From IMG/VR virus record IMGVR_UViG_3300035665_000001, positions 124,001 to 188,000 of that record: a stretch of DNA of 64,000 nt; one strand, written 5' to 3'. A model generated the notes under the pieces. That model was not told the origin of the DNA and did not search any database. It was given only the letters and a program-made list of their open reading frames with translations. How positions within the stretch are numbered: position 1 is the stretch's first letter; each line of letters starts with the position of its first letter. Positions 18,566 to 63,513 of the stretch are shown here, piece by piece. A program made the translations under genes and the position numbers.

Positions 18566-19807
18566 ATGATTAAAGACATTATATTGTGTGCAAATACCCC
18601 AAAGGTATCTAGTGGAACTACATATGCGAGTAGTTCAAATACTACCGCTAGTACAAACCGTGGAACTCCAGTATCACAAGCCTTTAATACATCGGGATCA
18701 TATTTTATATTTGGGACAACATCTGCTGGAAACTACTTACAGGTATCATTTGGATTTGCAGTATCCGTTACACAGGTAACATATCGAAATGCTGTTGGTA
18801 GTAGCTGGGCACCAACAAGTGTAAAAATTAGGTATAGTAATGATGGCAGTACATGGAATGATGCTGTCACTTACTCTGATAACGCCAGTACATCTTTACA
18901 AACTATATCTGTATCTGGTGGTTCTGGTTCTTATTGGCAGTTATACCAAAATAGTAGCACTCGTGCTGGTAGTGGTGGTTATGAGTGGCACATGGATAGT
19001 TTTTCTATGACTGGTTCGTATGGATTAGTTAATGGTCAGATTTCTTATACTGTTCCAGGTACTTATACATGGGTTTGTCCGCAAGGAATAACTAGTGTTT
19101 GTGCAGTTGCTATTGGTGGTGGTAGTGGAGGCTGTCATTATACTGGTGGTGCTGGTGGCGGTTTATCTTACCAAAATAATATTTCTGTAACGCCAGGTCA
19201 ATCTTATACTGTAGTTGTAGGTGCAGGTGCGGTTGGTACAGGTTGGACTTATGGAAAAGGTGGCGATAGTAGTGTTTTTGGTATGGTTGCTGGTGGCGGT
19301 GGTACAATCGGAGGTTTAGGTTATAATTCTACTCCACCTGGTGGTGTTGGTAATGCTGGAACTGGTGGGTTAGGAGAGGGTTATTTTAGAAATAATTCTG
19401 TCTACAATGTTGGTGGTAGTGGTGCTGGTGGTTACGGATACAATGGTGGCGTAGGTACATATATCACTAGTTCACATGGTAATGGAAATGGTGGTGGTGG
19501 TACTGGTATTTTTGGTGGTACTGTTGGTGGATCTGGTGGTACATATGGGTTTGGTAATGCTGGATATACTGGAAGCGGTGGTGCTGGTGGATCTGGTGGT
19601 ACATCCGGTGGATTAGTAACTGGGTGGACAACAGACAGTAGTGCAAGTAGTGGTTCTGGTACACCTGGCAGTGGCGGTTTATACGGTGGTGGTGGTGGTT
19701 CTGGATGTGGATATGGGTATGTTAGTTCCACTGGTGGAAATGGTGCTATACGTATCATCTGGGGTGCTGGTCGTGCGTTCCCAAATACATTAACTGGAGA
19801 CTTATAA
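18566..19807 (+). CDS. Glycine-rich fibre/receptor-binding protein with discoidin-like N-terminal domain
   Basis: MIKDIIL leader; YLQV.F..V..V...YSNDG.TW; PGTYTWVCP...AIGGG; GGNGAIRIIWG. Confidence 0.75.
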   Translation: MIKDIILCANTPKVSSGTTYASSSNTTASTNRGTPVSQAFNTSGSYFIFGTTSAGNYLQVSFGFAVSVTQVTYRNAVGSSWAPTSVKIRYSNDGSTWNDAVTYSDNASTSLQTISVSGGSGSYWQLYQNSSTRAGSGGYEWHMDSFSMTGSYGLVNGQISYTVPGTYTWVCPQGITSVCAVAIGGGSGGCHYTGGAGGGLSYQNNISVTPGQSYTVVVGAGAVGTGWTYGKGGDSSVFGMVAGGGGTIGGLGYNSTPPGGVGNAGTGGLGEGYFRNNSVYNVGGSGAGGYGYNGGVGTYITSSHGNGNGGGGTGIFGGTVGGSGGTYGFGNAGYTGSGGAGGSGGTSGGLVTGWTTDSSASSGSGTPGSGGLYGGGGGSGCGYGYVSSTGGNGAIRIIWGAGRAFPNTLTGDL

Positions 19808-22344: not shown

Positions 22345-22451
22345 ATAACATTCTGTTATAATTGACATTTTGTCCCCACTCAAAATTAAATTTGTCTGGG
22401 GATTTTTTGTGCTCGCCGATAAATAATTTTTAATATAATGTGGAGTATAAA

Positions 22452-25139
22452 ATGATTAAAGATATTATTTTGGGTGTTGAATCACCATATACAGTAAGTG
22501 GTAGTAGTGCTGGTGATAAAAATTGGGATAAAGTAAGTTTATTATTGAATGGGGATGATTTGTTTGATCATTCATCAAATACTAAAACTATAAGCAATAC
22601 ATTAACAACCGTTAACAATGCAACAAAAAAATTTGGTAGTGGCAGTTTATCATTTTCATCTTTAGCAACTATGGTTGTACATTCACCTTCTGATAATTTA
22701 ATAAATTGGTTTTCTGGTGGGACTTATACTTTTGAATGTTGGGTTTATCCTACATCAATAACAGATGCAAATTCTGGTGGATCGTTAGTTGGAAATGGGT
22801 GTTCGGATGGATCTAATGGATATAATTATTGGTCATTTGGACCTAAGTCTGATGGTAGACTCGGTTTGTATTATTATACAGGTGGGTTAAACAATGTTTA
22901 TTCAAACTCAACAATCCCGTTTAATGCTTGGACTCATATTGCTTTCACATGTGATGGAACTAATATAAAATTTTGGATAAATGGCAACTTAGATACCAAT
23001 ACCACCATAGTAGGTTCGCCACAAATTTCTAATGCTGCAAACACTGGTGATTTTTCTATGGGTAGATTAGCCGCAGGTGTATTTAGTGGTTACGTTGACG
23101 ATGTTCGAATTACAAAAGGTATTGATAGATATACAGCTAATTTTACGCCACCAACAGCAGCATTGCCAACTTCCATGTTTGTGGCTGATTCATCAGCAAC
23201 ACCTGTTTCTGATCCCAATACATCAAAATATGTTTCTTTGTTATTAAATGGCGATGGTACAAATGGTTCACAAAATAACACTTTCATTGATGGTAGTGTT
23301 AACAATGTAACCATTACTAAGTATGGTGATGCTACTCAAGGTTCTTTTAGTCCTTTCGGTAATTCGTGGAGTGTTTATTTTGATGGCAATGGGGATTATT
23401 TAAGTTTGCAAAATAGTGTTACCAATCAACCAGGCAATGGAGATTTTACTATAGAATGTTGGGTTAACGTAGATTACATTTCTTCGTATCAAATTATATT
23501 TTGTAAAGGTGAAGGGATAACTTCGGGTGAAATGTTTTTTGCTGTTACTGCATCTGGTTATATTGTATTGTATAACCCCTCAGTAACAAGTTCAAATACA
23601 ATTACTCCAGGTTTATGGAATCATGTAGCATTAGTTAGACAATCCGGAGTAATAAAAATATTCGTAAATGGTGTTGGTGGGACAGGTGTAAATGATTCGA
23701 CAAATTTCAATTCTACAAGCTATTTTAATTTAGGAGATAGAAATGCAGGTGCTAGTTATTTAAACTATCCGTTAAAGGGTGCAATATCAAATTTTAGAAT
23801 GGTGAAAGGTAGTGCACTTTATACTGCTAACTTTACACCATCTACAGCACCATTAGTTGCAGTAACGGGAACAACATTATTGATGTGTCAATCAAACGGG
23901 TTTATTGATAACAGCTCTAATAATTCTTTGATTACTGTTTATGGTGAAACTAAAATTATTAAAAGTAGTCCATTTCCCGAAATATATGATAAGAATGTTC
24001 ATGGAGGCAGTGTTTATTTTGATGGAACTGGTGATTATTTGAGTATGCCTAGTTCTGCTAATTATGCGTTTGATACCAGTGATTTTACAGTGGAAGCCTG
24101 GGTTAACCCAGCTACTGTTGGGTTATTGTGTGTTTTTCAATGTAGAGATACTGCATCTAATGGTATGTGGTTGGGATTATATAATGGTAACGTATTTTGG
24201 TATGATTCGGCAATTGGTACATGGAGTGGTACTGCGGTAAAATTAAATAGCTGGACACATTTAGCTTGGTCGAGAAATTCTAGTACATGCAGAATGTTTG
24301 TAAATGGTGATGATGTTGGAGTTACAAAAACATCAAATGCAAATTATACAAGCACTAATGCGAAAATAAGTTATGATGCTAGTAATAATGGTAATTATTT
24401 TAATGGTTATATTTCAAATTTGCGAGCAGTAAAAGGAACCGCACTTTACACTGTAAATTTTACACCAGGTACAAGTCCATTAAGTCAGGTATCCAATACG
24501 ATTTTACTGTTAAAATTTGATAATGCCGGGATTTATGATGCAATAGGTAAAAACGATTTAATAACTTATGGCAACTCTCAAATTAGTACAACCCAAAAGA
24601 AATATGGTACAGGTGCTATGTATTTTGATGGTAGTAGTTATGTAAAAATTCCAACTAGTGTTGGTGGAGATTTAGATTTTCAATCTATTGATTTTACTAT
24701 AGAATTTTGGGCAAATAGTCCAATGAGTGCAAATCAAGGATGGGTTGATAAGTGGGGAAGTAGTAGTAGCAGATCTGTGTTCATAGGATACTCAAATTCA
24801 TCACCTAGTTCAGGTGTGAATTTTAACTGGACTACTAATGGTACTAATTGGAGTGCAATTAATTCTTTATCTATCCCATCTGCAAATGTATGGCATCATT
24901 ACGCTGCAATTAGAAATGGTAATACATTAAACTTTTTTATTGATGGTGTTTCTCAAGGTACTGCATCGATAAGTGGTTCTATATATTCTAGTTCATCACC
25001 GTTTATTATTGGTTGTAATGGTGAAACACTAGGTTCTAGTTGGTATTATACGGGGTATATTGATGATTTGCGTATAATCAAAGGGAAAGCACTTTATACT
25101 GCAAATTTTACCCCTCCATCTGCACCATTATCATTATAA
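22452..25139 (+). CDS. Four-domain LamG/concanavalin-A-like receptor-binding protein 1
   Basis: Four repeats of FT.E.W...W.H.A..R...G.I...R..KG..YT.NFTP; MIKDIILG leader. Confidence 0.85.
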   Translation: MIKDIILGVESPYTVSGSSAGDKNWDKVSLLLNGDDLFDHSSNTKTISNTLTTVNNATKKFGSGSLSFSSLATMVVHSPSDNLINWFSGGTYTFECWVYPTSITDANSGGSLVGNGCSDGSNGYNYWSFGPKSDGRLGLYYYTGGLNNVYSNSTIPFNAWTHIAFTCDGTNIKFWINGNLDTNTTIVGSPQISNAANTGDFSMGRLAAGVFSGYVDDVRITKGIDRYTANFTPPTAALPTSMFVADSSATPVSDPNTSKYVSLLLNGDGTNGSQNNTFIDGSVNNVTITKYGDATQGSFSPFGNSWSVYFDGNGDYLSLQNSVTNQPGNGDFTIECWVNVDYISSYQIIFCKGEGITSGEMFFAVTASGYIVLYNPSVTSSNTITPGLWNHVALVRQSGVIKIFVNGVGGTGVNDSTNFNSTSYFNLGDRNAGASYLNYPLKGAISNFRMVKGSALYTANFTPSTAPLVAVTGTTLLMCQSNGFIDNSSNNSLITVYGETKIIKSSPFPEIYDKNVHGGSVYFDGTGDYLSMPSSANYAFDTSDFTVEAWVNPATVGLLCVFQCRDTASNGMWLGLYNGNVFWYDSAIGTWSGTAVKLNSWTHLAWSRNSSTCRMFVNGDDVGVTKTSNANYTSTNAKISYDASNNGNYFNGYISNLRAVKGTALYTVNFTPGTSPLSQVSNTILLLKFDNAGIYDAIGKNDLITYGNSQISTTQKKYGTGAMYFDGSSYVKIPTSVGGDLDFQSIDFTIEFWANSPMSANQGWVDKWGSSSSRSVFIGYSNSSPSSGVNFNWTTNGTNWSAINSLSIPSANVWHHYAAIRNGNTLNFFIDGVSQGTASISGSIYSSSSPFIIGCNGETLGSSWYYTGYIDDLRIIKGKALYTANFTPPSAPLSL

Positions 25140-43976: not shown

Positions 43977-44169
43977 AATGAATCTCCTTTTTATTGTTAT
44001 AAAATACCTATTTATCCAAAATACAAAACCATTATACAAAAAATATTTATTTTTTTGCGTTTATTATTTTAAAAAATAATCATTAACGTCAACATATAGT
44101 AAATTTTGTGGGACGGTGCTTTTTTGTAAAATAGGTAAAAACAACGTGTGGTTACACTGGAAAAAATAT

Positions 44170-45351
44170 ATGAAATCCGATAATTCAATCAGCTATCATT
44201 ATGTTTACAAAATTACAAATATTAATCCTCCTGATGAAAAAAAGTATTACATTGGTGTTAGAACAACCAAAAATAGAACACCTCAAGAGGATAGTAGTTA
44301 CATGGGATCATCAAAACATTTAAAATCCGCGATTAAAAAACAAGGAAAACAACATTTTTTTAAGGAAATATTATCTACTTGGAATTCAAGGGATGAAGCA
44401 AATGTAGAAGAAATAAGATTACATTCATTGTACTCAGTTTCGAGTAATGTCGAATATTACAATATGGCAGAAGCTGTAAGTGTTGGGTTTTGTACATACG
44501 GAAATGTTCCCGTTATCGATACAAATACGGGTAAAACACTTTCAGTGTCGTTAAAAAATTTTAATGAAACTTGTCATTATGTAACAAATTCAAAAGGTTG
44601 GGTATCTGTTATTGATACCCGAACAAATGAAACTACAAGAGTAACAGTGGAAAATTATCATCGATATGGATATTATAAGTGTATCAACACAGGTACCTTA
44701 GTGGTTATTGATACTCGAGACAAAAAGCGAAAAAAAGTGTCGGTAGAAGATTATTACAAACACGAACATTTTGAATGTTTGAGTGTGGGAAAATTAACGG
44801 TTAAAGATACTCGCACAAACAAACTAGTTAAAGTTTCAGTTGATGATTACTATAGATATGATTATTTTCAACATCCCTTCATAGGTCAAGTTACAGTAAT
44901 TGATACACGTGATGGAACAGTGAAAAATGTAAGTAGAGAAGAATTTTTAAATAATAATCATTTTGTTTCACCCTCAAAAGGTAGAGTCAGTGTTATCGAT
45001 TTGCGAGATGGTGTTAAAAAAATGGTTTCACAAGATGAATATCAAAATAATGAGTATTTCGTTTCTCCTGTCAAAGGGTTAGTTACAGTTATTGATACTC
45101 GTGATGGAGTAACTAAAAATGTCACGAGAATGGAATATCAAAGCACCGATAATTATATTTCGGTGGCAAGTAAAAAAGTGAATATTTACAATGCCTCACA
45201 TGAGTTAAAATATACCATTTGGGGAAAATTTAGAGAAACCTGTGTCAAACTAAAAATCCCTGCGAGATTATTTAAAGAATCGTGTAACAATAACTCAAAA
45301 CCCATTGTACACAAAAAATTTAATGGTTGGTATGCGATTGAAGTAAAATAA
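44170..45351 (+). CDS. Free-standing GIY-YIG homing endonuclease with seven 32-aa repeats
   Basis: YVYKITN...YYIG.R, YMGSS..L..AI.K.G...F.KEIL, YYN; repeats every 96 nt from 44500. Confidence 0.85.
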   Translation: MKSDNSISYHYVYKITNINPPDEKKYYIGVRTTKNRTPQEDSSYMGSSKHLKSAIKKQGKQHFFKEILSTWNSRDEANVEEIRLHSLYSVSSNVEYYNMAEAVSVGFCTYGNVPVIDTNTGKTLSVSLKNFNETCHYVTNSKGWVSVIDTRTNETTRVTVENYHRYGYYKCINTGTLVVIDTRDKKRKKVSVEDYYKHEHFECLSVGKLTVKDTRTNKLVKVSVDDYYRYDYFQHPFIGQVTVIDTRDGTVKNVSREEFLNNNHFVSPSKGRVSVIDLRDGVKKMVSQDEYQNNEYFVSPVKGLVTVIDTRDGVTKNVTRMEYQSTDNYISVASKKVNIYNASHELKYTIWGKFRETCVKLKIPARLFKESCNNNSKPIVHKKFNGWYAIEVK

Positions 45352-47448: not shown

Positions 47449-50082
47449 ATGATTAAGGATATTATATTAGGTTCATCAGAAACATTGACATCGACAGGCA
47501 GTGGTTCTGGTGATTCAAATTGGGATAAGGTAAGTTTATTATTAACCGGAAACAGTTTGTTAGATAGTAGTTTGTCAAACAATACTGTTTCTATTGTAGG
47601 CAACACGACTACATCATCTACACAGAAAAAATACAATAACACTAGTATTTATTTTGATGGTAGTGGTGATGAACTGTATGTTTCAAAAACAACTAGTCAG
47701 TTGATTGGACTATCAAATGATTTTACTGTTGAATTATGGTATTATGCTGATGGTAATCAATCTGCGTGGACGGGTATTATAAACAACTATCAAAGTGGTG
47801 GTTGGGGTTCAAATTCTAGTTGGTGGCTTGGATATGATGGTTCAGGTAGTAATGTACAAATTGGTGTAAAAACGGATTCTTCTCAAACATCAACTACACC
47901 AGTAAATGTTTCAGTTAATACATGGCATCATATTGCGTTTGTGCGTTATGGAAACAATTATACCATGTATCTTGATGGTGTTGGTGTAGGAACAGTTACT
48001 AATTCGGGTACGATAGTAGATACCAGCACAAAATTGGAAATTGGTGCCTGGGGTAATAATGTATATAATGTTAAAGCTTATATGAGTGACATTAGAATTA
48101 CAAAAGGTGTTGCTAGATATACTACAACATTTACACCACCTATTTCATCATTACCAACAGCAGCATTTGTTGCGACATTAGCAACACCAGCTTCCGATCC
48201 TAATACATCTAAATATGTTACTCTCCTATTAAATGGTGAGGGAACAAATGGATCTCAAAACAATACGTTTATTGATTCATCCTCTAATAACGCAACCGTC
48301 ACTAAATATGGTGATGTTACTCAAGGTTCATTTGGACCATTTGGTAATTCGTGGAGTGTTTATCTTGATGGTGCTGGGGATGATTTATATATACCTACTT
48401 CTTATGGTATTGGAGTTGGAGATTTTACTGTTGAAGCCTGGGGATATTTAAATGTACTATCTTCATGGAGTGATATTATCTGTTTTATTGGTAGTACATC
48501 ATGGGGATTAACCACGAATAACGGTGATATTGGTGCTTATAACATTGGTATAAACACATCGGGCACTATAATACCTACAAATTCATGGAACCATTTATCA
48601 ATTACGAGACAATCGGGTACAGTTAGATTATTTTTAAATGGTAGTCTTATAGGATCATCCACAAATAACACATCATTGGATAATACAAGTGTTAGAATTG
48701 GTGCCTGGGTATCATCTGGTACTGAAAACTGGAACGGTTATATTTCAAATCTTAGAGTAGTAAAAGGTACTGCACTTTATACCTCTAATTTTACTCCACC
48801 AACATCACCTTTAACAGCAGTTTTGGGAACAGTATTGTTGACTTGTCAATCAAATTGGATAAAAGATAATTCAGTCAATAATGTAACAATAACAGTAAAT
48901 GGTGATACTAAAGTAGTTAAAGATAGTCCTTTTCCTGAAGTTTATGATAAAACTGTTCATGGTGCAAGTGTTTATATACCATCAACGAGTTATTTGTCCA
49001 TACCTACCTTAGCAAATTATGGATTAGATGGGGATTTTACTGTTGAGGCATGGATTTATCCAAATAGTTATTCGACGTACGCCTATATTTTTTCAGTTAC
49101 TAACAATCCTAATGGGTTTGTATTTTATATTAATGGTGGTTATCTTAAAGTTCGAGCATATTATAACACTGATTTATTGTCCGTAACTGCACCACCATTA
49201 AATGTATGGTCTCACGTTGCCGCAACCAGAAGTGGTTCAACACTTAAAATTTTTATAAATGGTGTTCAAATGGGCAGTGTATCCAATTCAACCATTTTTC
49301 CTGCAAATGCTATTAGAGTTGGTGTGGATGGTACTGGTGGTGACTGGAATGGATATATATCAAATTTAAGAGTAGTGAAAGGAAGTGCACTCTATACTAA
49401 CAATTTCACTCCACCATCATCACCACTAAACATCGTTACAAATACATCAGTTTTATTGAAATTCGATAATGCTGGAATTATTGATTCTAGTGGGAAAACT
49501 GATTTAACAACTTATGGAAATGCTCAAATTAGTACAACATCAAAAAAATTTGGTACAGGTGCTATCTACTTTGATGGTAGTGGTGATTATCTAATAACAC
49601 CTCCAATATCAAGTAGTTATTTGATTGACACCACTGTTAACTACACTATAGAATGTTGGGTAAATATTACTGCAAATCCAAATACAGGTTATGGTCCTGT
49701 ATTTGTTTTAAATGGTGGTAGTTCAGGTACAAATGGCATTAGTGTTTGGATTTATAATAGTACCATCAATTTTTGGAATAATGGTTATTCTGCACCATTT
49801 GGTACATCAGGAAGTATTAGTTTTAATACCTGGTACCATATCGCTTATGTAAAAAATGGAACTACACTTACAGGTTATGTGAATGGTATATCTGTTGGAA
49901 CTGCAACTACGGTTACTGCAAACGGTGCTACTAATCAAATATATATTGGTGGAACATCCGCCGGTAAATCGTGGGATGGTAATTATTCATATTTGGGTTA
50001 TATTGATGATTTTAGAATTACTAAAGGAAAAGCTCTTTATACTAGTAATTTTACACCACCCACAACATCATTAACATTATAA
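47449..50082 (+). CDS. Four-domain LamG-like receptor-binding protein 2
   Basis: Same framework as 22452; MIKDIILG leader; late motif at 47412. Confidence 0.85.
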   Translation: MIKDIILGSSETLTSTGSGSGDSNWDKVSLLLTGNSLLDSSLSNNTVSIVGNTTTSSTQKKYNNTSIYFDGSGDELYVSKTTSQLIGLSNDFTVELWYYADGNQSAWTGIINNYQSGGWGSNSSWWLGYDGSGSNVQIGVKTDSSQTSTTPVNVSVNTWHHIAFVRYGNNYTMYLDGVGVGTVTNSGTIVDTSTKLEIGAWGNNVYNVKAYMSDIRITKGVARYTTTFTPPISSLPTAAFVATLATPASDPNTSKYVTLLLNGEGTNGSQNNTFIDSSSNNATVTKYGDVTQGSFGPFGNSWSVYLDGAGDDLYIPTSYGIGVGDFTVEAWGYLNVLSSWSDIICFIGSTSWGLTTNNGDIGAYNIGINTSGTIIPTNSWNHLSITRQSGTVRLFLNGSLIGSSTNNTSLDNTSVRIGAWVSSGTENWNGYISNLRVVKGTALYTSNFTPPTSPLTAVLGTVLLTCQSNWIKDNSVNNVTITVNGDTKVVKDSPFPEVYDKTVHGASVYIPSTSYLSIPTLANYGLDGDFTVEAWIYPNSYSTYAYIFSVTNNPNGFVFYINGGYLKVRAYYNTDLLSVTAPPLNVWSHVAATRSGSTLKIFINGVQMGSVSNSTIFPANAIRVGVDGTGGDWNGYISNLRVVKGSALYTNNFTPPSSPLNIVTNTSVLLKFDNAGIIDSSGKTDLTTYGNAQISTTSKKFGTGAIYFDGSGDYLITPPISSSYLIDTTVNYTIECWVNITANPNTGYGPVFVLNGGSSGTNGISVWIYNSTINFWNNGYSAPFGTSGSISFNTWYHIAYVKNGTTLTGYVNGISVGTATTVTANGATNQIYIGGTSAGKSWDGNYSYLGYIDDFRITKGKALYTSNFTPPTTSLTL

Positions 50083-50242: not shown

Positions 50243-52855
50243 ATGATTAAAGATATTATATTAGGTTCATCCGAAATAGTAACAGTAAGTGGTACAGGTG
50301 ATCCAAATTGGAGTAACGTTGCGTTGTTATTAAATGGTGATGATTTATTGGATCATTCGAGTAATTCTAAAACCATAACTGTTAATGGTACTATATCAAT
50401 TAATACAACTACAAAGAAATACGGAACAGGTTCATATTATAGTTCATCTGCTGGAAATTATTTAACAGTTACAAATATGGGTTTATTTGGATCTTCTAAT
50501 TTTACAATGGAAGGATGGTTTTATAAGATAGCTAGCACTGGAAATGGGTTGACAAGTTATTTTTCATATAACCAATATACGGATGGTATTTTATTCCGCG
50601 ACGATTGTTTATATATTAATGGTTTGAATTTAGGTTCATTTTCATCAGGTTTATCAACAAACACTTGGCACCATATAGCATTAGTCCGTGATGGAAACAC
50701 TTTTACAATTTATTTAGATGGTGTGTCGACTAAACAATATAGTAGTAATGCTGTTATTTCACCATCATCCACAACAACATTATGGGTGGGTGCGGCATCA
50801 CATAATGCAGGTAGTGAAGGGTTTTATGGGTATATTGATGATGTAAGAGTAACTAAAGGGGTTGCGGTTTATACTGCAAATTTTACACCAACACAATTAC
50901 AGATTGGAGCTTTCACAACTTCACCTGTTTCTGCTTCCGATCCAAATACATCGAGATATGTTTCTTTATTATTAAATGGTGATGGTACAAACGGTGCACA
51001 AAATAATACTTTTGTTGATAGTAGTTCAAGTAATTTGACTGTTACTAGGTATGGTGATTCAACACAGGGCTCATTTGGACCTTTTGGTAATAGTTGGGGT
51101 GTTTCTTTTAATGGTGCATCCGATTATTTAGAGGTACCAACAGCTTTTGCAGGTTTAACAAATACAACATCACCATTTACAGTCGAAGGTTGGTTTAATA
51201 GTAATATATCTATTTCTGGTATTTGTCCAATCGGTATGAATAGTAAGAGTTCAGGGACAAATGTTTTATTATGGGGTGGTGATTTATGGGTAAATAATAC
51301 GAATGTATTTTCATTTAGTACAAACCATACCGATGTAGTAAAATATAATTGGTATCATGTTGCTATTTGTTACAATGGATCAACAGTAAAATGGTATGAA
51401 AATGGTAATTTAATTTATACTTATAATGGGGCATTAACAGTTGCACCTAATGATTGTACATTAGGAATTGGTGCTGAATTTGACGCTGCAAATGGTGGCA
51501 GTCCAGGCAATTATCATAATGGTTACATAAGTAATTTTAGAGTTAGTAATATCGTTCGTTATACATCGAACTTTACACCACCAACATCTAATTTTGTTTC
51601 AGATACAAATACTTTACTATTAACCTGTAGTGGTAATATGTTTAAAGATTATTCATCACTTAATAAAACAATATCAATTTTTAATACACCAAAAATTGTA
51701 AAGGAATGTCCATTTCCAGAAGTGTATGATAAAACTGTTCAAGGTGGAAGTGCTTATTTTGATGGTACAGGTGATTATTTGACTACTAATGGAGTATCTA
51801 TTTCATCAGCAACAAATTATACCTTAGAATTCTGGTTTTATACCACCGATGTAACTGCAAGTTATCACAGAATTATTCATAATAACTCCAATGGTAATAT
51901 TTATTATTGGTACACCAATGGGACAACATTATATGGTTATAATGCTGACATTGGTACCCTTATTTCTGCAGGGACATTTGTTCCAGGTCAATGGACTCAT
52001 GTTGCGATTAGTAGAGTGAGTACAACGACCACGGTGTATTTAAATGGGGTTTCTACAAAAACGTATTCTGGTTCAAGTGCATTCACTACGATTGGTAATA
52101 CAATTGGTGGCGGTCCAGCTTCAGAATATTTTACTGGATACTTATCTAATATTCACATTGTAAATGGTACAGCATTATATACCTCCAATTTTACACCATC
52201 AACATCTCCATTAACAGCAATTGCAAACACCTCATTACTATTGAAGTGTGATAATGCTGGTATTATCGATGCAATAGGTAAAAATGATTTGGTTACTTAT
52301 GGTAATGCTCAAATTAGTACAGCTAAGAAAAAATATGGTACAGGCAGTATGTATTTCGATGGTTCAAATGGTTATTTGGTAATACCCCACAATACCAATT
52401 TAAATATGGTAGGAGGTAATTTTACTATTGAGTTTTGGGCTAATTTTGCGGCAAATCAAAACGGTCCTGTTATTTCGAAATGGATAAATGGTAAAGGTGA
52501 ATTTTATTTTGGTATTCATAATTCAGCAGTACAATGTGCAATTTTAAATAGTTCCAGTGCTGGGAATACCTCTGGTGGTACATTTTGTTCAGCAGGTGCA
52601 TTTACAACGAATGTTTGGAATCATTGGGCTGCGGTTAGAAATGGTGATAATATTTTAATGTTTAAAGATGGTGTTTTACAATCAACTACATCATTTACTG
52701 GTAATATTTTTACATCTGATTCAAAATTAACATGTGGGTATAATTTAGACAATGGTTGGACAATAAACGGTTACATAGATGATTTAAGAATCACAAAAGG
52801 GAAAGCGTTGTACACATCAAACTTTACACCTCCATCTACACCACTAACACCATAA
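50243..52855 (+). CDS. Four-domain LamG-like receptor-binding protein 3
   Basis: Same framework; MIKDIILG leader; late motif at 50202. Confidence 0.85.
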   Translation: MIKDIILGSSEIVTVSGTGDPNWSNVALLLNGDDLLDHSSNSKTITVNGTISINTTTKKYGTGSYYSSSAGNYLTVTNMGLFGSSNFTMEGWFYKIASTGNGLTSYFSYNQYTDGILFRDDCLYINGLNLGSFSSGLSTNTWHHIALVRDGNTFTIYLDGVSTKQYSSNAVISPSSTTTLWVGAASHNAGSEGFYGYIDDVRVTKGVAVYTANFTPTQLQIGAFTTSPVSASDPNTSRYVSLLLNGDGTNGAQNNTFVDSSSSNLTVTRYGDSTQGSFGPFGNSWGVSFNGASDYLEVPTAFAGLTNTTSPFTVEGWFNSNISISGICPIGMNSKSSGTNVLLWGGDLWVNNTNVFSFSTNHTDVVKYNWYHVAICYNGSTVKWYENGNLIYTYNGALTVAPNDCTLGIGAEFDAANGGSPGNYHNGYISNFRVSNIVRYTSNFTPPTSNFVSDTNTLLLTCSGNMFKDYSSLNKTISIFNTPKIVKECPFPEVYDKTVQGGSAYFDGTGDYLTTNGVSISSATNYTLEFWFYTTDVTASYHRIIHNNSNGNIYYWYTNGTTLYGYNADIGTLISAGTFVPGQWTHVAISRVSTTTTVYLNGVSTKTYSGSSAFTTIGNTIGGGPASEYFTGYLSNIHIVNGTALYTSNFTPSTSPLTAIANTSLLLKCDNAGIIDAIGKNDLVTYGNAQISTAKKKYGTGSMYFDGSNGYLVIPHNTNLNMVGGNFTIEFWANFAANQNGPVISKWINGKGEFYFGIHNSAVQCAILNSSSAGNTSGGTFCSAGAFTTNVWNHWAAVRNGDNILMFKDGVLQSTTSFTGNIFTSDSKLTCGYNLDNGWTINGYIDDLRITKGKALYTSNFTPPSTPLTP

Positions 52856-56847: not shown

Positions 56848-57210
56848 TTATTTACTTGGTTCTACAGGCCATGCAATTTGCTCAGGTGTTGTAACATAGG
56901 GTTGAACACTTGGAAAATTACGTAATGCATTACGATAAGCTGCCCATTCTGCTTTTTTTGCATCTGATAATGCCGCGTCTGGAAGTTGTGTCCAATCAGA
57001 CATTTTCAATAAATCTGTACGAACAGTTCTAATATAATTAAAGAACTGTTCGTTGGTTGGAGGAACGATTGTTTCCGCCTCAAAATATTCAACATACCCT
57101 AATTCAGCTAAACCGACTTGGTCTTTTAAACCTGTTCTAGCTAATACATCCAAATATGGTATTTTACTTTCTGTAACAATACCACCAACTTCTAAATTAT
57201 AATAAACCAT
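56848..57210 (-). CDS. Tail-fibre assembly chaperone
   Basis: R..R..LL..SDWTQLPD...WA.YR.ALR..P...I.WP..P; start at MVYYN. Confidence 0.85.
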   Translation of the reverse strand: MVYYNLEVGGIVTESKIPYLDVLARTGLKDQVGLAELGYVEYFEAETIVPPTNEQFFNYIRTVRTDLLKMSDWTQLPDAALSDAKKAEWAAYRNALRNFPSVQPYVTTPEQIAWPVEPSK

Positions 57211-59381
57211 TACATATCTCCTGTACCTGTTGATGGGAATGAACGACCAGATCCCCAAATTATACGAACGCAACCACGACCACCTTTATTTAATCCGTAA
57301 CCCATTGGACTACTACTACCAGTTCCGCCACCGCCACCGCCATATAAACCACCTACTTTTGTACCAAAAACACCTATACTCCACCATGGGTTTTCACCAA
57401 TGTCACCATCTGTACCACCGGAACCACACATACCACCCGAATGTGCCCGTGAACTTCCTGATGTACCTTGACCAAATGGACCAACACCACCACCTGCACC
57501 TGTACCATAAGTAGAAGAGTACATATAACCACCTGCTGCACCGCCACCAGATCCATTGTGATTGGCACCATTTTCTCCAGATCCACCGTTTCCTGTATAA
57601 CCGCCGGCACCACCACCAGAACAAGCCCATTGTCCTGAACCATAACCACCATTACCACCACCACCTCTATATGCTCCACCACCACCAGCATTACTACCAT
57701 TGGAACCGCCATTAGCATAGAGTGTAGATGTATTTATGAAGTATGATTGACCACCGGATAAATCACCACCATTCCCATCACCACCTTTACCAACTTGAAC
57801 CGTATAATCTGTACCTGGTGTTACTGGAATGTTATTACCCCACGATAAAGCTCCACCAGCTCCACCACCATAAGACCATTGTGAACCACCACCAGCTCCA
57901 CCACCGATACAAACTACAGAAACAGATGTTACCCCAGGAGGACATCTCCATGTATAAGTACCATGTCCAGAACCATAGAAAGCTTGTCCAACTAATGAAC
58001 CACTACCACCAACAACAGTTCCAGAAACAGTAGTAGAAATAGATGCATTTCCTGTTCCATCGAATGAAACCGAACCAGTGACGTCACCAGTTAAAGAGAT
58101 AGTTCTTGCAGTTGCTAATTTAGTTGCTGCTGCTGCAGTTGCAGTTAGACCTAATTTACCATCAATGTTTGTTTGTAATGTTGTAACTGCTGAAGCTCTT
58201 GTAGATACTTCACTTGCCAAATTGTTGGTTAAAGTGGTAATTGCTGCTTGTCTTGCAGATGTTTCAACAGCTATAGCAGCTGCTTGTGCAGTTGAAACAG
58301 GTTTTGATAAGTCGGCTGTATTATCAACGTTAGTTAAACCAATTGCTGATTTATCTAATACACCATTTACAAAATTAGTACCATTCCATTTAATAATGTC
58401 GTTCACTTGTTTATTTGAAATTAATACATCATTTAATGAACCTAAAGCATGGTTATGATTGGTTTTACTATAGGTAAGATTTGTAAACTCTCTAGTTGCG
58501 ATAGTTTCAAATGTTCCACCAATTTGACCAACTTTGAAGAAATCATCTAATTCATCAAATAATAGAGCAAAATCAGACATATCACCACGATCAACTTGGA
58601 TACCAGCTTTACCTAAAGTAACACCTGAACCAATTTCTCCGGAATTAACTACAATAATGTTATCTTTAACATTTACAATTGTTGAGTTTACAGATGTTTG
58701 TGTACCGTTAACTGTTAAGTTACCACCAATAGTTAAATTACCACTCAATTGTTGACTAGTTCCAGAAATAGTGCTACTAAACACAGTTGGTGCAGATACT
58801 TGTACCTCATTAGTTGCACCAATACGAACATTAGAACCGGTACCAACTGCATTTAAAAATACGTCAGCGTTAATTCCTGATGTAGATATATTTACTGATT
58901 TTTCAGATTCAACTGTAGTTGTGCCAGTCCCAGAAGTTTTCATATCAATTGACTGATTACTATCTGAATGAATGTTAATTGTAGTTGCAGTTGTACCCAA
59001 AATAGCTGTATCACCAATATACAATGTATTTGTCGATAATTTGGCTTCATCAACGAAGATTGTTTTAAATCTTTGTGTTACTGAACCAATATCAATGTTA
59101 GCACCGCTTGGTAAAATTGTACTTGCTACAGTAAGTGATTTTGCATTGAAATCTTGTAACACGCTACCTGCTAAATTGGCTTTTAATGCATCTGCAGCTT
59201 TATAGGCTGTATCCAGTGCATTAACTGTATTCGATAATGTAGTAATAGCAGTTGTTCTAGATGTATTTGCAGAGGCAATATCAGCAGATAAACTATTATC
59301 AGCTGCCTGTCTTGCAGATGCTTCATTTGCAACAGCGGTTGCAACTACACTACCAATTTTTTTAAAAATTGAATCAACCAT
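57210..59381 (-). CDS. Tail/whisker fibre (MVDSIFKK family) with a glycine-rich tip
   Basis: GNLTVNGT, DNII..N, GLTNVDNTADL.KPVSTAQ, ARTISLTGD, Gly-rich GCVRIIWG tip. Confidence 0.82.
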   Translation of the reverse strand: MVDSIFKKIGSVVATAVANEASARQAADNSLSADIASANTSRTTAITTLSNTVNALDTAYKAADALKANLAGSVLQDFNAKSLTVASTILPSGANIDIGSVTQRFKTIFVDEAKLSTNTLYIGDTAILGTTATTINIHSDSNQSIDMKTSGTGTTTVESEKSVNISTSGINADVFLNAVGTGSNVRIGATNEVQVSAPTVFSSTISGTSQQLSGNLTIGGNLTVNGTQTSVNSTIVNVKDNIIVVNSGEIGSGVTLGKAGIQVDRGDMSDFALLFDELDDFFKVGQIGGTFETIATREFTNLTYSKTNHNHALGSLNDVLISNKQVNDIIKWNGTNFVNGVLDKSAIGLTNVDNTADLSKPVSTAQAAAIAVETSARQAAITTLTNNLASEVSTRASAVTTLQTNIDGKLGLTATAAAATKLATARTISLTGDVTGSVSFDGTGNASISTTVSGTVVGGSGSLVGQAFYGSGHGTYTWRCPPGVTSVSVVCIGGGAGGGSQWSYGGGAGGALSWGNNIPVTPGTDYTVQVGKGGDGNGGDLSGGQSYFINTSTLYANGGSNGSNAGGGGAYRGGGGNGGYGSGQWACSGGGAGGYTGNGGSGENGANHNGSGGGAAGGYMYSSTYGTGAGGGVGPFGQGTSGSSRAHSGGMCGSGGTDGDIGENPWWSIGVFGTKVGGLYGGGGGGTGSSSPMGYGLNKGGRGCVRIIWGSGRSFPSTGTGDM

Positions 59382-60956: not shown

Positions 60957-61298
60957 TTAATGTTTGGTCATATCATGAAATTCTTTAATAGTAAACTCCA
61001 TTATTTCACCAGTTAAATCATTCCTTACAGTGATGATTGAATTTCCTTTTACACATTTACTCATTTGACGACTAGCTAAAAGAATAGATCTTTCAGAATT
61101 TTGAAAAAGATCTAACATTTCAAATTGATATGGTTTGATAACCTTTGCAAAATTAACAGGTCCATCGGATGTATTAATATCACAATAATAAGTAAACCGT
61201 TTTAATCCTGTTGGTCTTCTCATTAATCTAGCCATTTCCATAGTTTGTTCTAATGAAAGTGATATTTCCTGATTTGCTCTCCTAATATAATCTGCCAT
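60957..61298 (-). CDS. terL: Terminase large subunit piece 1: N-terminal extein (81 aa) plus 32-aa IntN
   Basis: PYQ..ML, SILLASRQMSK| followed by CVKGNSIITVRNDLTGEI..FTI.EF*; late motif at 61331. Confidence 0.88.
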   Translation of the reverse strand: MADYIRRANQEISLSLEQTMEMARLMRRPTGLKRFTYYCDINTSDGPVNFAKVIKPYQFEMLDLFQNSERSILLASRQMSKCVKGNSIITVRNDLTGEIMEFTIKEFHDMTKH

Positions 61299-61589
61299 AA
61301 TATGGTATCCTTTTGTTGTATGATTTATGCTATTTATTTTACATTTGATTTGGTGGTGTAATAATCTATATTTATAAGGTGTTAAAACATGATTATTATC
61401 TTATGGTGATAAATTCTATTTTAGATGATATTTTCTTTTTCTTTTTGCTGAAAGCAGATGTTATCCTCAAGGGAGCTTCTTAAAAAGAAGCTCCTCTTTA
61501 AGATTCTTTAATATCTATTCTTTAGGAAAATATTTTTCGTTTTTATACTATATTAATAAGGGGTTTTTTCGAGGGTGTTCAAAAAAATT

Positions 61590-61787
61590 CATTTTCTATT
61601 GGGAGAAATCAATTTTTTTTCATTTTCTATTGGGAGGAAATAACGAAAATTCATTTTCTATTGGGAAAGATTCAAATATCATTTTCTATTGGGAAGTTAT
61701 TTTTCATTTTCTAAGGTATAATAATATGTAAAATATTTCATTCTATTCTTTGAATGAAAATGAAAAATAACTTCCCAATAGAAAATG
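61590..61787. repeat. Iteron-like array (putative replication origin)
   Basis: CATTTTCTATTGGGA at 61590, 61621, 61652, 61680; partial at 61705; inverted copy at 61773-61787. Confidence 0.85.
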
Positions 61788-61792
61788 AAAAA

Positions 61793-62962
61793 ATGAAAAT
61801 AAATAAGCACAATTTTGAAATCAATAAACCCTCCGAACTATGTCAAGTAGTTTTTTTTGAAAATTATAAAAAAGGTATTTTTGCATACTTAACACCAACA
61901 CAAATTGACCTGATTAATATTTTATTTTATCAGGTTAAAAAAGAGATATTAACTGATAAAACATCAACCGATGATTTAGATAGTATAATTATGGTAGATA
62001 TTGAATTGACTGAAATTCACAGAATGTTAAATTATAAGTATAATAAGGATAGTGAAGCCTTACTAAATTACCTCTATGAGTTAAAGAAAGTTGATGTTAT
62101 GGTTAATACTTTAGGTAAAGTAAAAGACAGAATTGATTATAAACTAACATCAATAATCCATACACTAGAATGGTCAAAACATAAGAATATTTTAGATAAG
62201 AAAATAAAAATTGGTATAGACCGAGATATTATTCTATCTTTCATTGATAGAAAGGATTATTTTGCAAAGATGCATCTTTCATTACAATTATCAATGGTTT
62301 CAAAATATTCTAAGTTGTTATATGAGATATTGAAAGATTACGCTGGACTAAAAACGATTACTGTTGATTTTGGAATATTATTACCATTACTAAATGTTAA
62401 TTTTGAAAATACTAGGAATGGTGAATGGTCTATGTTTAATCAAAACATTTTAATGAAATCGGTTAATGAAATCAATGAAAAATCTGATATTGTAGTTTCT
62501 TATGAAGCGATTAAAGAAAAACCAGAAGGTGGTAGATTGCAAGTAACTAAAATAAAATTTACTATTGAAAAACAACCAGAAATAAGATTGTGTGAATTGG
62601 GTTTAATTCCACCAAGAATTGATAATAATAAATTTTATAATAAATCAAAAACTAAACTAGATAAATTGATTAGTAGTGGTTATAAAGTTATTGATGAGGA
62701 AAAATGGATTGAAACAGATATTACCAATAATGAAGAAAGATATGATGCAGAAATGCGTGTAGATATGTGGTTGAAAAGCACACCACGAGAAGATAGAAAT
62801 AAGATTTATGAATTACTTGCAACAAATTTAGATGAATGTCATGAGCAATTTATCACCATTGAAGGCTATTTAATTAAAGGTATTTTTTCAAATGAAGCCT
62901 ATACTAAGAATCCAATGGAAACTATTGCTGTTATGAATGATTTTTTGAGCAAAATAACATAA
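61793..62962 (+). CDS. Rep3/RepB-type plasmid replication initiator
   Basis: LT..Q..L...L, SKYSKLLYEILKDY, FNQ.IL..SV.EINEKSDI.V.Y, GR...I.F.I; start may be 61754 or 61793. Confidence 0.82.
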   Translation: MKINKHNFEINKPSELCQVVFFENYKKGIFAYLTPTQIDLINILFYQVKKEILTDKTSTDDLDSIIMVDIELTEIHRMLNYKYNKDSEALLNYLYELKKVDVMVNTLGKVKDRIDYKLTSIIHTLEWSKHKNILDKKIKIGIDRDIILSFIDRKDYFAKMHLSLQLSMVSKYSKLLYEILKDYAGLKTITVDFGILLPLLNVNFENTRNGEWSMFNQNILMKSVNEINEKSDIVVSYEAIKEKPEGGRLQVTKIKFTIEKQPEIRLCELGLIPPRIDNNKFYNKSKTKLDKLISSGYKVIDEEKWIETDITNNEERYDAEMRVDMWLKSTPREDRNKIYELLATNLDECHEQFITIEGYLIKGIFSNEAYTKNPMETIAVMNDFLSKIT

Positions 62963-62997: not shown

Positions 62998-63513
62998 ATG
63001 GCTGACGAAAAACTTAGTGCAAAATTTGCAAAATATTGTGGAGAAGGCAAACTTACCATGGTTAAAAAATATATTGCTGATAAAAATGTCGATGTTAATT
63101 GGAATATGAGTTCACCATTAACAAAAGCAGTTAAATATGATAAAATTGAAGTTGTGAAACTTTTACTATCTGACCCTCGATTACAAACCGATTTTGAGAA
63201 TAAAAAAGAGTTGCGTGGATCGTTAATGTATAATAACCCACCATTAGTTTTAAATAATGTTATTATCAATCCATTTACTGAGGCAATGTTTACTAAAAAG
63301 TATGATATTCTCGATTTATTTTTATCAGATGGTAGATTTACAACTAATCGAACTGAATATTTGGATATTTTATTAAAAATTGATGATGATGAATTGAACA
63401 ATTACTTTAAAAAAATTCCAGGGTTTAAAGAATATGCTGTTTCCAAAGTTAAAGAAAACAATGATTATGTTAAGATAATTTCTAAATCTGTTGCATCCAT
63501 TATGATGTTTTAA
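62998..63513 (+). CDS. Ankyrin-repeat protein with divergent terminal tag (ISKSVASIMMF)
   Basis: C.EGKL.MVK, VDVN...SPL..AV......VVKLLL.DPR; late motif at 62959. Confidence 0.75.
   Translation: MADEKLSAKFAKYCGEGKLTMVKKYIADKNVDVNWNMSSPLTKAVKYDKIEVVKLLLSDPRLQTDFENKKELRGSLMYNNPPLVLNNVIINPFTEAMFTKKYDILDLFLSDGRFTTNRTEYLDILLKIDDDELNNYFKKIPGFKEYAVSKVKENNDYVKIISKSVASIMMF

What the first reader, a model, noticed from the sequence alone, without database searches (positions are those of the whole stretch)
61470..62962. Plasmid-type initiator and iterons in a T4-like genome
Seen: four exact 15-bp repeats (spacing 31, 31, 28 bp), one partial copy, and an inverted copy straddling the rep promoter/start. 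A hairpin lies at about 61472-61494. Established: Rep3 monomers bind iterons and dimers autorepress at inverted repeats. Inferred: the phage may persist as a plasmid or use a dual replication mode.
Basis: partly seen in the sequence, partly recalled or inferred. Interest (0 to 1): 0.65.

Follow-up and report, generated by a model that had tools for sequence, protein, structure and literature searches.

The report
Plasmid-type replication origin in jumbo phage
An uncultured lake-water phage of about 300 kb, with T4-type virion genes, carries a plasmid-style replication origin (repeated binding sites next to the gene for the protein that binds them) and a second, different one elsewhere in its genome, which probably shows how this group of giant phages starts copying its DNA.

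Summary
Four exact direct copies of a 16-nt iteron (spacing 31/31/28), one partial copy and one exact inverted copy lie upstream of a gene whose product passes both Pfam Rep3 cut-offs and folds like RepE and Pi.

The window belongs to a 306-kb IMG/VR virus record (GC 30%, lake water) with T4-type capsid, portal, sheath, baseplate, UvsX-like and gp32-like genes.

New here:
- The same genome has a second Rep3 paralog (50% identity) 117 kb away, with unrelated iterons of its own.
- About 100 metagenomic homologs, many on 120-500 kb phage contigs, share one origin plan: hairpin, a conserved 37-nt AT-rich block with three TTCTTTA units, a TATTAATAAGG motif, 3-5 iterons at 31-32 bp, a promoter-like site and an inverted iteron.
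- Some contigs carry two or three such cassettes, one of them decayed.
- The family has a conserved extra C-terminal domain.
- It was not found in deposited phages, plasmids or bacterial genomes, except as distant partial matches.

No ParA, ParB, TubZ or integrase was found. I therefore read it as a phage origin and initiator pair used during infection, not a plasmid-prophage replicon. That is unproven, because the record is 85% complete and the host is unknown.

The parts
61366..61383 (+). Distal copy of the TAT(T/A)AATAAGG-type motif (CTATATTTATAAGGTGTT). Most relatives also have two copies flanking the conserved block.
   Evidence: D6, 89% to the proximal copy; two copies per origin in oriB, L017, L019 and L036.
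61446..61456 (+). Small hairpin TGCT-GAA-AGCA. The same sequence is found at oriB and in L017; L036 and L025 have variant stems at the same position.
   Evidence: read from the alignments; no consensus fold was computed.
61461..61469 (+). DnaA-box-like 9-mer TTATCCTCA, one mismatch from TTATCCACA. A weak candidate only.
   Evidence: ATCCTC is conserved in relatives, but it also forms part of hairpin arms.
61472..61494 (.). GC-rich hairpin (10-bp stem, 3-nt loop) abutting the conserved block. Relatives have hairpins of different sequence at the same place.
   Evidence: (I22).
61490..61526 (+). Conserved 37-nt AT-rich block with three TTCTTTA-type units about 11-13 nt apart. Candidate DNA-unwinding element or ssDNA site.
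   Evidence: An nhmmer profile hits only upstream of rep genes. In the own genome it hits only here and at oriB (G000 68091-68124, -), and it hits in all related loci. The block is less stable than the local mean (-40.5 against -45.6 kcal/mol per 40-mer, sd 2.8).
61548..61575 (+). Proximal conserved motif: TATTAATAAGG, then G, a T-run and CG, between the AT-rich block and the iterons. The binding factor is unknown.
   Evidence: Genome-wide it occurs only at the two rep loci. It sits at -200 to -290 from rep in the window, oriB, L017, L019, L026, L036 and L038.
61589..61694 (+). Iteron array: four exact 16-nt copies starting at 61589, 61620, 61651 and 61679 (period 31, 31, 28).
   Evidence: unchanged in independent metagenome contigs.
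61704..61722 (+). Partial iteron (61704-61713) followed by the -10-like TATAAT (61717-61722). This is the presumed rep promoter, with iteron 4 over the -35 position.
   Evidence: Read from the sequence. The consensus scan did not list it because it lacks a -35 match.
61756..61788 (-). Right arm of the perfect 33-nt inverted repeat (left arm 61679-61711). It contains the inverted iteron 61773-61788. Presumed operator for autorepression.
   Evidence: I1. An inverted iteron near the rep start also occurs in L019, L036, L035, L126, L040 and oriB.
61754..62962 (+). rep gene. The longest ORF is 402 aa; the likely start is ATG 61793 (389 aa). Residues by ORF numbering: WH1 about 46-194, WH2 about 224-271, clade-specific C-terminal helical domain about 283-402.
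   Evidence: start; C-terminal domain.

Best explanation
The locus is an iteron-type replication origin (oriA, about 61366-61790) together with the gene for its cognate Rep3-family initiator. It belongs to an uncultured freshwater jumbo myophage with a T4-type core.

Proposed mechanism, by analogy with RepE, Pi and TrfA:
- Rep monomers bind the four iterons. These are phased at about three helical turns, so they lie on one face of the DNA.
- The loaded array melts the adjacent conserved AT-rich block (61490-61526). Rep may also hold one of its strands.
- A replicative helicase is then loaded, and replication starts from this point during infection.
- Rep bound at iteron 4 and at the inverted iteron, which flank the rep promoter, represses its own gene.

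The same genome has a second, orthogonal pair (RepB and oriB, G000 66651-68606). The genome therefore probably fires from at least two initiator-specific origins, before or beside recombination-dependent replication driven by its UvsX-like and gp32-like proteins.

Shown: family membership, fold, repeat architecture, conservation of the plan in relatives, and absence of partition and integration genes from the record. Inferred: binding, melting, helicase recruitment, autorepression and timing in the infection cycle.
For: - Rep3_N and Rep3_C are both above Pfam cut-offs, and also for RepB. PDB profile hits go to Pi and RepE. Foldseek's top hits are RepE54-iteron and RepE-DUE-ssDNA complexes, TM by target 0.76-0.82.
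- There are five exact iteron copies against none in shuffles.
- The same ordered plan (hairpin, conserved block, TATTAATAAGG motif, 3-5 iterons at 31-32 bp, promoter, inverted iteron) is found upstream of homologs of 37-73% identity.
- The 37-nt block is found only upstream of rep genes across about 1 Mb of fetched sequence.
- Reps of 67-69% identity have iterons differing at 1-2 positions, while the 50% paralog in the same genome has an unrelated iteron. This fits cognate pairs.
- Homologs sit on phage contigs of 120-496 kb amid T4-type genes such as UvsW, Cas4-like nuclease, topoisomerase and SprT.
- No ParB_N, AAA_31, tubulin or tyrosine integrase was found.
- No full-length relative was found in plasmids or in 185,579 species' genomes.
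- Both origins lie in divergent intergenic regions, as the more active T4 origins do (PMC3016281).
- Rep proteins are known to bind both iterons and DUE ssDNA (PMC10602881).
Against: - There is no experimental or read-based evidence that replication starts here. Only contigs, not raw reads, were available, and no RNA run holds the locus.
- GC skew shows no origin signal, because it tracks gene strand.
- No DnaB-family helicase or Toprim primase was found in the record, so the helicase that Rep would load is unidentified.
- The record is only 85% complete, so par, integrase or helicase genes could lie in the missing part.
- The AT-rich block is not the least stable stretch locally.
- Genomic context of the cassette is not conserved, and a decayed copy exists. 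This also fits a dispensable or mobile module.
Confidence: 0.62

Rival explanations
1. Plasmid-prophage or carrier-state replicon. The Rep-iteron module maintains the phage genome as a low-copy episome during lysogeny or pseudolysogeny, as in P1-type phage-plasmids. Lytic replication would then use other means.
For: Rep3-iteron replicons are typical of plasmids, and the nearest annotated relatives are plasmid initiators. The only weak hits among deposited phages are Clostridioides difficile phages with a RepB-family protein. Autorepression and iterons are copy-number control devices. Jumbo phage-plasmids and pseudolysogeny in jumbo phages are reported (PMC9700832 abstract; PMC7824862). The record is 85% complete, so par genes could be missing from it.
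Against: No ParB_N, AAA_31 ParA, tubulin/TubZ or tyrosine integrase was found in 306 kb. No full-length family member was found in PLSDB or in one genome each of 185,579 species, where an episomal prophage should sometimes be assembled. The genome has a T4-type core with UvsX-like and gp32-like genes, a kind of phage known as strictly virulent (my own knowledge). Two or three different cassettes per genome are not needed for maintenance.
Confidence: 0.2
2. Selfish or exchangeable ori-rep cassette. The module spreads between co-infecting jumbo phages by recombination at its conserved sequences, or with the help of fused or nearby homing endonucleases. It persists without being required for phage replication.
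For: Flanking genes differ in every relative. oriB and repB sit between the portal and head genes of an otherwise conserved T4-type module. RepA and RepB of one genome fall in different well-supported subclades, and another contig combines yet another subclade. A decayed cassette exists. Six homologs carry an N-terminal T5orf172/MUG113 nuclease-like domain. Assembly graphs of single lake samples branch inside the conserved block into other cassettes (loose ends).
Against: Mobility and function are not exclusive: an origin can be both exchangeable and used. No terminal repeats, integrase or transposase flank the cassette. Rep is conserved full-length without stops in about 100 sequences, and iterons are kept exact, which indicates selection on function.
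Confidence: 0.12
3. The Rep-like protein acts only as a transcription factor. The repeats would be operator sites for local gene control, with no role in replication.
For: Rep3 dimers are repressors of their own promoters, and a perfect inverted repeat brackets the promoter-like site.
Against: Four phased direct repeats next to a conserved AT-rich block, kept in this order across relatives whose iterons have diverged completely, form the signature of an origin rather than an operator. The monomer-type RepE54-iteron complexes are the best structural matches, while the dimeric RepE-operator form matches far worse (TM 0.39 by target).
Confidence: 0.04

Closest known systems
Mini-F oriS/RepE and R6K gamma ori/Pi (Rep3 family iteron plasmids)
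   Same: Two winged-helix domains (Pfam, PDB profile and fold). Direct iterons lie between an AT-rich region and the rep gene. An inverted iteron sits at the rep promoter. A DnaA-box-like 9-mer may lie at the far edge.
   Different: The replicon is a phage genome of at least 306 kb, not a plasmid. The iteron period is 31-32 bp, against about 22 bp (the latter from my own knowledge). The protein is about 390 aa, with a conserved 120-aa C-terminal domain that has no Pfam or PDB match. The operator half-sites are 94 bp apart. A conserved 37-nt block and a TATTAATAAGG motif are specific to this clade. It scores far below the NCBIfam RepE and RepM cut-offs.
Bacteriophage T4 oriE with its 12-nt 'iterons' and RepEA/RepEB
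   Same: It is a T4-type genome with evenly spaced direct repeats at a putative origin, located at a region of divergent transcription (PMC3016281).
   Different: In T4, no initiator is known to bind the repeats and their role is called 'ill defined'. Here a bona fide Rep3 initiator gene is adjacent. I did not compare RepEB with Rep3. T4 oriF and oriG use R-loops, not an initiator protein.
Phage-plasmid replicons (P1-type; Clostridioides phage phiSemix9P1 RepB-family gene)
   Same: They are phage genomes that encode a plasmid-type initiator. phiSemix9P1 and HGP05 are the only, and weak, matches in INPHARED.
   Different: Those are temperate phages of 50-100 kb with partition functions (my own knowledge). 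Here no par or integrase genes were found, the core is T4-type, and there are two or more cassettes per genome.
Lambda O protein and ori-lambda (lytic phage initiator binding four repeats)
   Same: A phage-encoded origin-binding protein, four phased repeats next to an AT-rich region, and recruitment of the host helicase (my own knowledge).
   Different: It is a different protein family, and ori-lambda lies inside the O gene. This was not tested here.
Multi-origin archaeal chromosomes (Sulfolobus oriC1-3, each with its own adjacent initiator gene)
   Same: One replicon carries several origins, each next to a distinct cognate initiator paralog. The initiators fall in separate clades, as if captured independently (for this phage; the archaeal side is my own knowledge).
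   Different: The initiators are Orc1/Cdc6 and WhiP, not Rep3, and the replicon is a cellular chromosome. This is an analogy of logic only.

Membership tests
Rep3 iteron-binding initiators (Pfam Rep3_N PF01051 + Rep3_C PF21205) | N-terminal winged-helix domain WH1 | tested here: met
   Rep3_N scores 33.3 bits against a cut-off of 22.4, residues 46-194. RepB scores 32.5 bits.
Rep3 iteron-binding initiators (Pfam Rep3_N PF01051 + Rep3_C PF21205) | Second winged-helix domain WH2 | tested here: met
   Rep3_C scores 36.4 bits against a cut-off of 21.1, residues 224-271.
Rep3 iteron-binding initiators (Pfam Rep3_N PF01051 + Rep3_C PF21205) | Three-dimensional fold of RepE/Pi | tested here: met
   The AF2 model has pLDDT 84.4. 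Foldseek matches RepE54 at E 3.7e-11 with TM by target 0.79, and Pi (2nra) at E 3.8e-7. This is a predicted structure, not a solved one.
Rep3 iteron-binding initiators (Pfam Rep3_N PF01051 + Rep3_C PF21205) | Array of direct repeats (iterons) next to the rep gene | tested here: met
   There are four exact copies 99-204 nt upstream of ATG 61793. Arrays are present in relatives.
Rep3 iteron-binding initiators (Pfam Rep3_N PF01051 + Rep3_C PF21205) | Inverted iteron sequence at the rep promoter (autoregulation) | tested here: met
   The sequence feature is present: a 33-nt perfect inverted repeat around TATAAT. Repression itself was not tested.
Rep3 iteron-binding initiators (Pfam Rep3_N PF01051 + Rep3_C PF21205) | Sequence-specific binding of Rep to iterons, and origin melting | not testable with these tools
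   Needs EMSA, footprinting or KMnO4 probing.
Rep3 iteron-binding initiators (Pfam Rep3_N PF01051 + Rep3_C PF21205) | Host DnaA box in the origin (common but not universal) | tested here: inconclusive
   There is one 8/9 match, TTATCCTCA, at 61461. The host and its DnaA-box consensus are unknown.
Phage-plasmid (episomal prophage) | Partition system (ParAB, TubZ or similar) | tested here: not met
   ParB_N, AAA_31 and Tubulin gave no match in the 306-kb record. The record is 85% complete, so absence is not proven.
Phage-plasmid (episomal prophage) | Found as an extrachromosomal element in bacterial isolates or assemblies | tested here: not met
   PLSDB gave only matches of 37% identity or less over residues about 160-340. 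GTDB species genomes gave only distant partial matches.
Phage-plasmid (episomal prophage) | Lysogeny control (repressor / anti-repressor) | not tested
   No search for CI-type repressors was made.
T4-type (Straboviridae-like core) myophage | gp23-type major head, gp20-type portal, sheath, gp15-type sheath stabiliser, baseplate wedge | tested here: met
   PHROGs 138, 213, 23, 227 and 10646/219. The capsid protein matches 2,556 phage records, mostly T4-like coliphages and cyanophages, with the best at 31-33% identity.
T4-type (Straboviridae-like core) myophage | T4-type replication and recombination set (PolB, gp32, UvsX, gp41 helicase, gp61 primase) | tested here: inconclusive
   A PolB-like gene, a gp32-like SSB and a UvsX/RecA-like gene with intein pieces were found. 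DnaB_C, AAA_25 and Toprim_2 were not found.
T4 oriE-type iteron origin | 12-nt evenly spaced repeats with repEA/repEB nearby | not tested
   This is known only from the review. No sequence comparison with T4 oriE or RepEB was made.

The most novel reading that the evidence does not exclude
A lineage of freshwater T4-type jumbo phages has replaced or supplemented the R-loop and recombination-based initiation of T4 with several orthogonal plasmid-type origin-initiator pairs per genome. Each Rep recognises only its own iterons, while all origins share one conserved unwinding block. A genome of 300 kb or more would then be fired from multiple specific origins, the same logic as multi-origin archaeal chromosomes. 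The cassettes would be exchanged between co-infecting phages. The clade-specific C-terminal domain would be the adaptor that recruits the helicase.
Probability: 0.35. Interest if true: 0.75.

Novelty: new variant of a known kind. Interest (0 to 1): 0.6.

Why it matters
How T4-type and jumbo phages choose where to start replication is still open. [quoted passage not shown] My term searches of the 2021 comparative survey and the 2026 review of jumbo phages found no mention of an origin-binding initiator.

This locus offers a sequence-defined, testable origin: about 500 bp plus one gene, in a T4-type jumbo phage. It comes with a natural specificity control, the second pair in the same genome, and a family of about 100 variants with different iterons. 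If it is functional, it would:
- give a handle for mapping replication in uncultured giant phages from metagenomic coverage;
- supply parts for orthogonal replicons;
- show that multi-origin, multi-initiator organisation arose in viruses too.

If instead it is a maintenance replicon, it would show a T4-type phage with an episomal state, which would also be unexpected.

Tried and rejected
Cumulative skew follows gene orientation (coding-strand skew +0.17) and shows no turn at either rep locus, so it is uninformative.
- parAB search. None was found, and no TubZ or tyrosine integrase either.
- blastn and tblastn against 50,697 deposited phages. There was nothing at E <= 1e-5 and only three weak hits at E <= 1. 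Rep3_N is absent from the five nearest cultured jumbo phages by capsid similarity.
- Known RNA families in 61250-61850. The only hits were far-sub-threshold miRNA-precursor matches caused by the long inverted repeat.
- RNAalifold on the hairpin region of 12 loci gave no consensus structure, because the alignment of the variable hairpins is poor. The idea of an origin transcript or terminator ending at the hairpin therefore stays untested.
- The consensus scan found no intrinsic terminator and did not list the rep promoter.
- C-terminal domain (283-402). There was no Pfam hit. Atlas hits stayed below the useful score. A separate AF2 model (pLDDT 85) gave no Foldseek hit at E <= 0.001 and a best VIA Z of 5.4, on pyrin-like helical bundles and within noise. 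Its function is left open.
- Search for the helicase that Rep would load. DnaB_C, AAA_25 and Toprim_2 are absent from the record. One relative (G005) has a DnaB_C gene, but its only match in the own genome is the RecA/UvsX-like gene.
- Rep identity against iteron similarity over 45 pairs gave only a weak rank correlation (rho 0.21, p 0.17). The pattern is a step, similar above about 67% identity, rather than a gradient.
- Reads. No RNA run holds the locus, and only Logan contigs were available, so depth, ends and transcripts could not be read.
- The large profile search and the complex prediction were not used, because no claim needed them.
Full report
**1. What is in the sequence**

The region 61300-62962 was read directly. 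The 16-mer TCATTTTCTATTGGGA occurs exactly at 61589, 61620, 61651 and 61679 on the + strand, and once inverted at 61773-61788. One hundred dinucleotide-preserving shuffles of the 64-kb window gave no exact match, and the whole 306-kb genome has no further copy.

A partial copy at 61704-61713 abuts a TATAAT at 61717-22. Iteron 4 and the inverted copy, each with its flank, form a perfect 33-nt inverted repeat (61679-61711 / 61756-61788) around that promoter-like site. The hairpin at 61472-61494 has a 10-bp perfect stem.

Contig pieces from independent lake-water metagenomes reproduce the array without change. The only correction is that the exact core is 16 nt, and 17 nt in three copies.

**2. 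The gene**

The ORF 61754-62962 (402 aa) passes both Rep3 Pfam models: Rep3_N 33.3 bits against 22.4, and Rep3_C 36.4 against 21.1. Further support:
- A profile of 34 family members finds Pi of R6K (E 2.9e-9) and RepE of F (1e-5) among solved structures.
- The AlphaFold model (pLDDT 84) superposes on RepE54-iteron and RepE-DUE-ssDNA complexes, at E about 1e-10 with TM 0.76-0.82 by target.
- NCBIfam RepM and RepE models match far below their cut-offs, so this is a Rep3 superfamily member and not one of those named subfamilies.

Homologs start at the position of ATG 61793, and in L036 an in-frame stop lies just before the equivalent ATG. The likely product is therefore 389 aa, with the inverted iteron in the leader.

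Residues about 283-402 form a conserved, confidently modelled helical domain. It has no Pfam, Atlas or PDB relative.

**3. The genome**

The window is bases 124001-188000 of a 306,333-bp IMG/VR virus record. The record is linear, CheckV rates it 85% complete, and its GC content is 30%.

It encodes:
- T4-type portal (with an HNH insert), major head protein, sheath, sheath stabiliser and baseplate wedge proteins;
- ribonucleotide reductase and a PolB-like polymerase;
- a gp32-like SSB and a RecA/UvsX-like gene carrying intein pieces;
- many homing endonucleases.

The capsid protein matches 2,556 phage records, chiefly T4-like coliphages and cyanophages. It is only 31-33% identical to the best of them, which are jumbo myophages such as Phosso, XaC1, SCTP-2, PA5oct and Asteriusvirus-like coliphages. 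'T4-like' is thus right in the broad sense of a distant jumbo relative. The locus is present in lake-water and freshwater metagenomes from many studies.

**4. A second module in the same genome**

Rep3_N finds a second gene at G000 66651-67844 on the - strand, 117 kb away, between the portal gene and the head genes. It is 50% identical to the first.

Its upstream region has three 32-bp-spaced iterons of unrelated sequence. A partial inverted copy lies over its first codons.

The two upstream regions share a leader that occurs nowhere else in the genome. It consists of a TGCT-GAA-AGCA hairpin, a 37-nt AT-rich block, and a TATTAATAAGG motif followed by a T-run.

**5. The family and its conserved origin plan**

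The word-based protein search returned 104 relatives, nearly all unnamed metagenomic proteins of 385-410 aa. Many lie on contigs of 120-496 kb. IMG/VR holds relatives on records of 122-290 kb. Gene neighbourhoods are phage-like and differ from case to case: topoisomerase IA, Cas4-like nuclease, polynucleotide kinase, UvsW, SmpB, Hen1, SprT, and runs of small ORFs.

Upstream of every homolog inspected there is a 400-850-bp non-coding stretch with the same order of parts:
1. a hairpin of variable sequence;
2. the conserved block with three TTCTTTA-type units;
3. the TATTAATAAGG motif, often with a second copy further upstream;
4. three to five iterons at 31-32 bp;
5. a TATAAT-like site;
6. an inverted iteron at the rep start.

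An nhmmer profile of the block hit about 1 Mb of fetched DNA only at these positions. This included a weak hit in the right place before a 28%-identical rep on a 7.5-kb Cloacimonadota-binned contig.

Iterons differ by one or two bases between Reps of 67-69% identity, and are unrelated between more distant ones, with one exception. So the iterons diverge together with their Rep while the unwinding block stays fixed. This is what is expected if Rep reads the iterons and a conserved activity acts on the block. That activity could be Rep's ssDNA face or a helicase or loader (PMC10602881).

**6. Several cassettes per genome, and turnover**

Besides the genome studied here:
- A 31-kb ENA contig has two intact cassettes and one decayed one. 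The decayed copy keeps the block, the palindrome, one iteron identical to the window's, and a 37-codon remnant of the Rep C-terminus.
- A 224-kb IMG/VR record has two rep genes.

In a maximum-likelihood tree, RepA and RepB of this genome fall in different well-supported subclades. The second Rep of the ENA contig falls in a third. The copies are therefore not recent duplicates.

Six relatives carry an N-terminal T5orf172/MUG113 nuclease-like domain. Assembly graphs of single lake samples branch within the conserved block into other cassettes.

**7. Plasmid persistence or origin used in infection?**

Searches of the 306-kb record found no ParB_N, AAA_31 ParA, tubulin/TubZ or tyrosine integrase, and the positive controls worked.

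PLSDB and one genome each of 185,579 species contain only distant matches, mostly partial, to ordinary plasmid initiators from Bacteroidota, Psychrobacter and Clostridium. The 50,697 deposited phages contain nothing at E <= 1e-5. At E <= 1 they give only three weak hits, two of them Clostridioides phages. The five nearest cultured jumbo phages lack Rep3_N.

Together with the T4-type core, this favours an origin and initiator used for phage genome replication during infection. The caveats are real:
- the record is incomplete;
- the host is unknown;
- GC skew is dominated by transcription and says nothing;
- no raw reads or RNA were available;
- no DnaB-type helicase or Toprim primase was found in the record, so the helicase partner is unknown.

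**8. Comparison with what is known**

The locus works like mini-F oriS/RepE or R6K gamma/Pi, and it meets every sequence- and fold-level criterion of the Rep3 family that could be tested.

It differs in five ways:
- the replicon type;
- the 31-32-bp period;
- the separated operator half-sites;
- the extra C-terminal domain;
- the clade-specific conserved block and motif.

Within T4 biology, the nearest thing is oriE. Its 12-nt 'iterons' have no known binding protein or role (PMC3016281). My term searches of the comparative survey of 224 jumbo phages and of the 2026 review found no mention of an origin-binding initiator. Full-text searches for jumbo phage with iteron or Rep3 found nothing relevant. 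Some IMG records do label homologs 'plasmid replication initiation protein', so the annotation exists but not the analysis.

**9. Verdict**

Plasmid persistence is not supported.

The best reading (0.62) is a phage origin-initiator pair, one of at least two orthogonal ones in this genome. It represents a conserved, exchangeable origin cassette of an uncultured lineage of freshwater T4-type jumbo phages. I class it as a new variant of a known kind.

Only table 11 was used. Read laying was given 2.7 kb.

Noticed in passing
G000:C1:66651-68606 (= L002:865-2820, outside the window): A second Rep3 gene (397 aa, 50% identical) has its own origin with three 32-bp-spaced iterons. It is inserted between the portal gene and the head genes of the T4-type module.
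   Followed up: yes
L035:19400-19722 (ENA ERZ27239226 contig k119_437579): A decayed origin cassette. It keeps the conserved block, the palindrome, a single iteron identical to the window's, and a 37-codon remnant of the Rep C-terminus. tRNA-like genes lie just upstream. The same 31-kb contig has two intact cassettes.
   Followed up: partly
L002:2363-2550 and L019:5366-5653: Long direct repeats lie upstream of the conserved block in some origins: 2 x 68 nt spaced 120 bp in L002, and 3 x 96 nt in L019. They share TTGATTTCCTCT. The window's oriA has none. Their function is unknown.
   Followed up: no
window 61366-61383 and 61548-61575; same motif in oriB, L017, L019, L026, L036, L038: A TATTAATAAGG-type motif, palindromic in several relatives, usually occurs twice per origin and flanks the AT-rich block. 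It is conserved although the iterons differ, so it is probably a site for a conserved factor that I could not identify.
   Followed up: partly
window 22440-25139, 47449-50082, 50243-52855: Three paralogous proteins of about 870-900 aa, each with four internal repeats, match baseplate-wedge or virion-structural PHROGs (24074, 3545, 13163). They coincide with GC-rich islands (0.34-0.40 against 0.29).
   Followed up: no
window 57210-59381 (-) and 18566-19807 (+): Tail-fibre-like proteins sharing phrog_4474. The first ends in a long glycine-rich tract.
   Followed up: no
G000 241522-242856 (L013:1522-2853) and G000 63460-66627 (L006:3460-6624): The RecA/UvsX-like gene carries Hint/intein pieces, and the 1055-aa portal has an HNH-endonuclease insert. 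Several free-standing homing endonucleases occur too, for example window 44116-45351. The genome is heavily colonised by selfish elements.
   Followed up: no
proteins P0026, P0039, P0074, P0080, P0083, P0088: Rep homologs of 430-589 aa with an added N-terminal T5orf172/MUG113 (GIY-YIG-like) domain. This may be a nuclease-initiator fusion.
   Followed up: partly
window 62998-63513 (+); L038:3641-4192: A small ankyrin-repeat-like protein lies next to rep in the window. Its Pfam Ank_2 score of 22.8 bits is below the cut-off. An Ank-like gene also lies next to rep in one relative.
   Followed up: no
L040:1165-1476 (7.5-kb contig binned with a Cloacimonadota MAG): A distant Rep (28% identity) is preceded by four iterons, an inverted copy and a weak match to the conserved AT-rich block in the right place. 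The origin plan may therefore be older than the jumbo-phage clade.
   Followed up: no
whole record G000: No tRNA gene was found in the parts of the record outside window 16001-56000, which is unusual for a jumbo phage. No DnaB-type helicase or Toprim primase was detected, whereas the relative G005 has a DnaB_C gene at 149-150 kb.
   Followed up: partly
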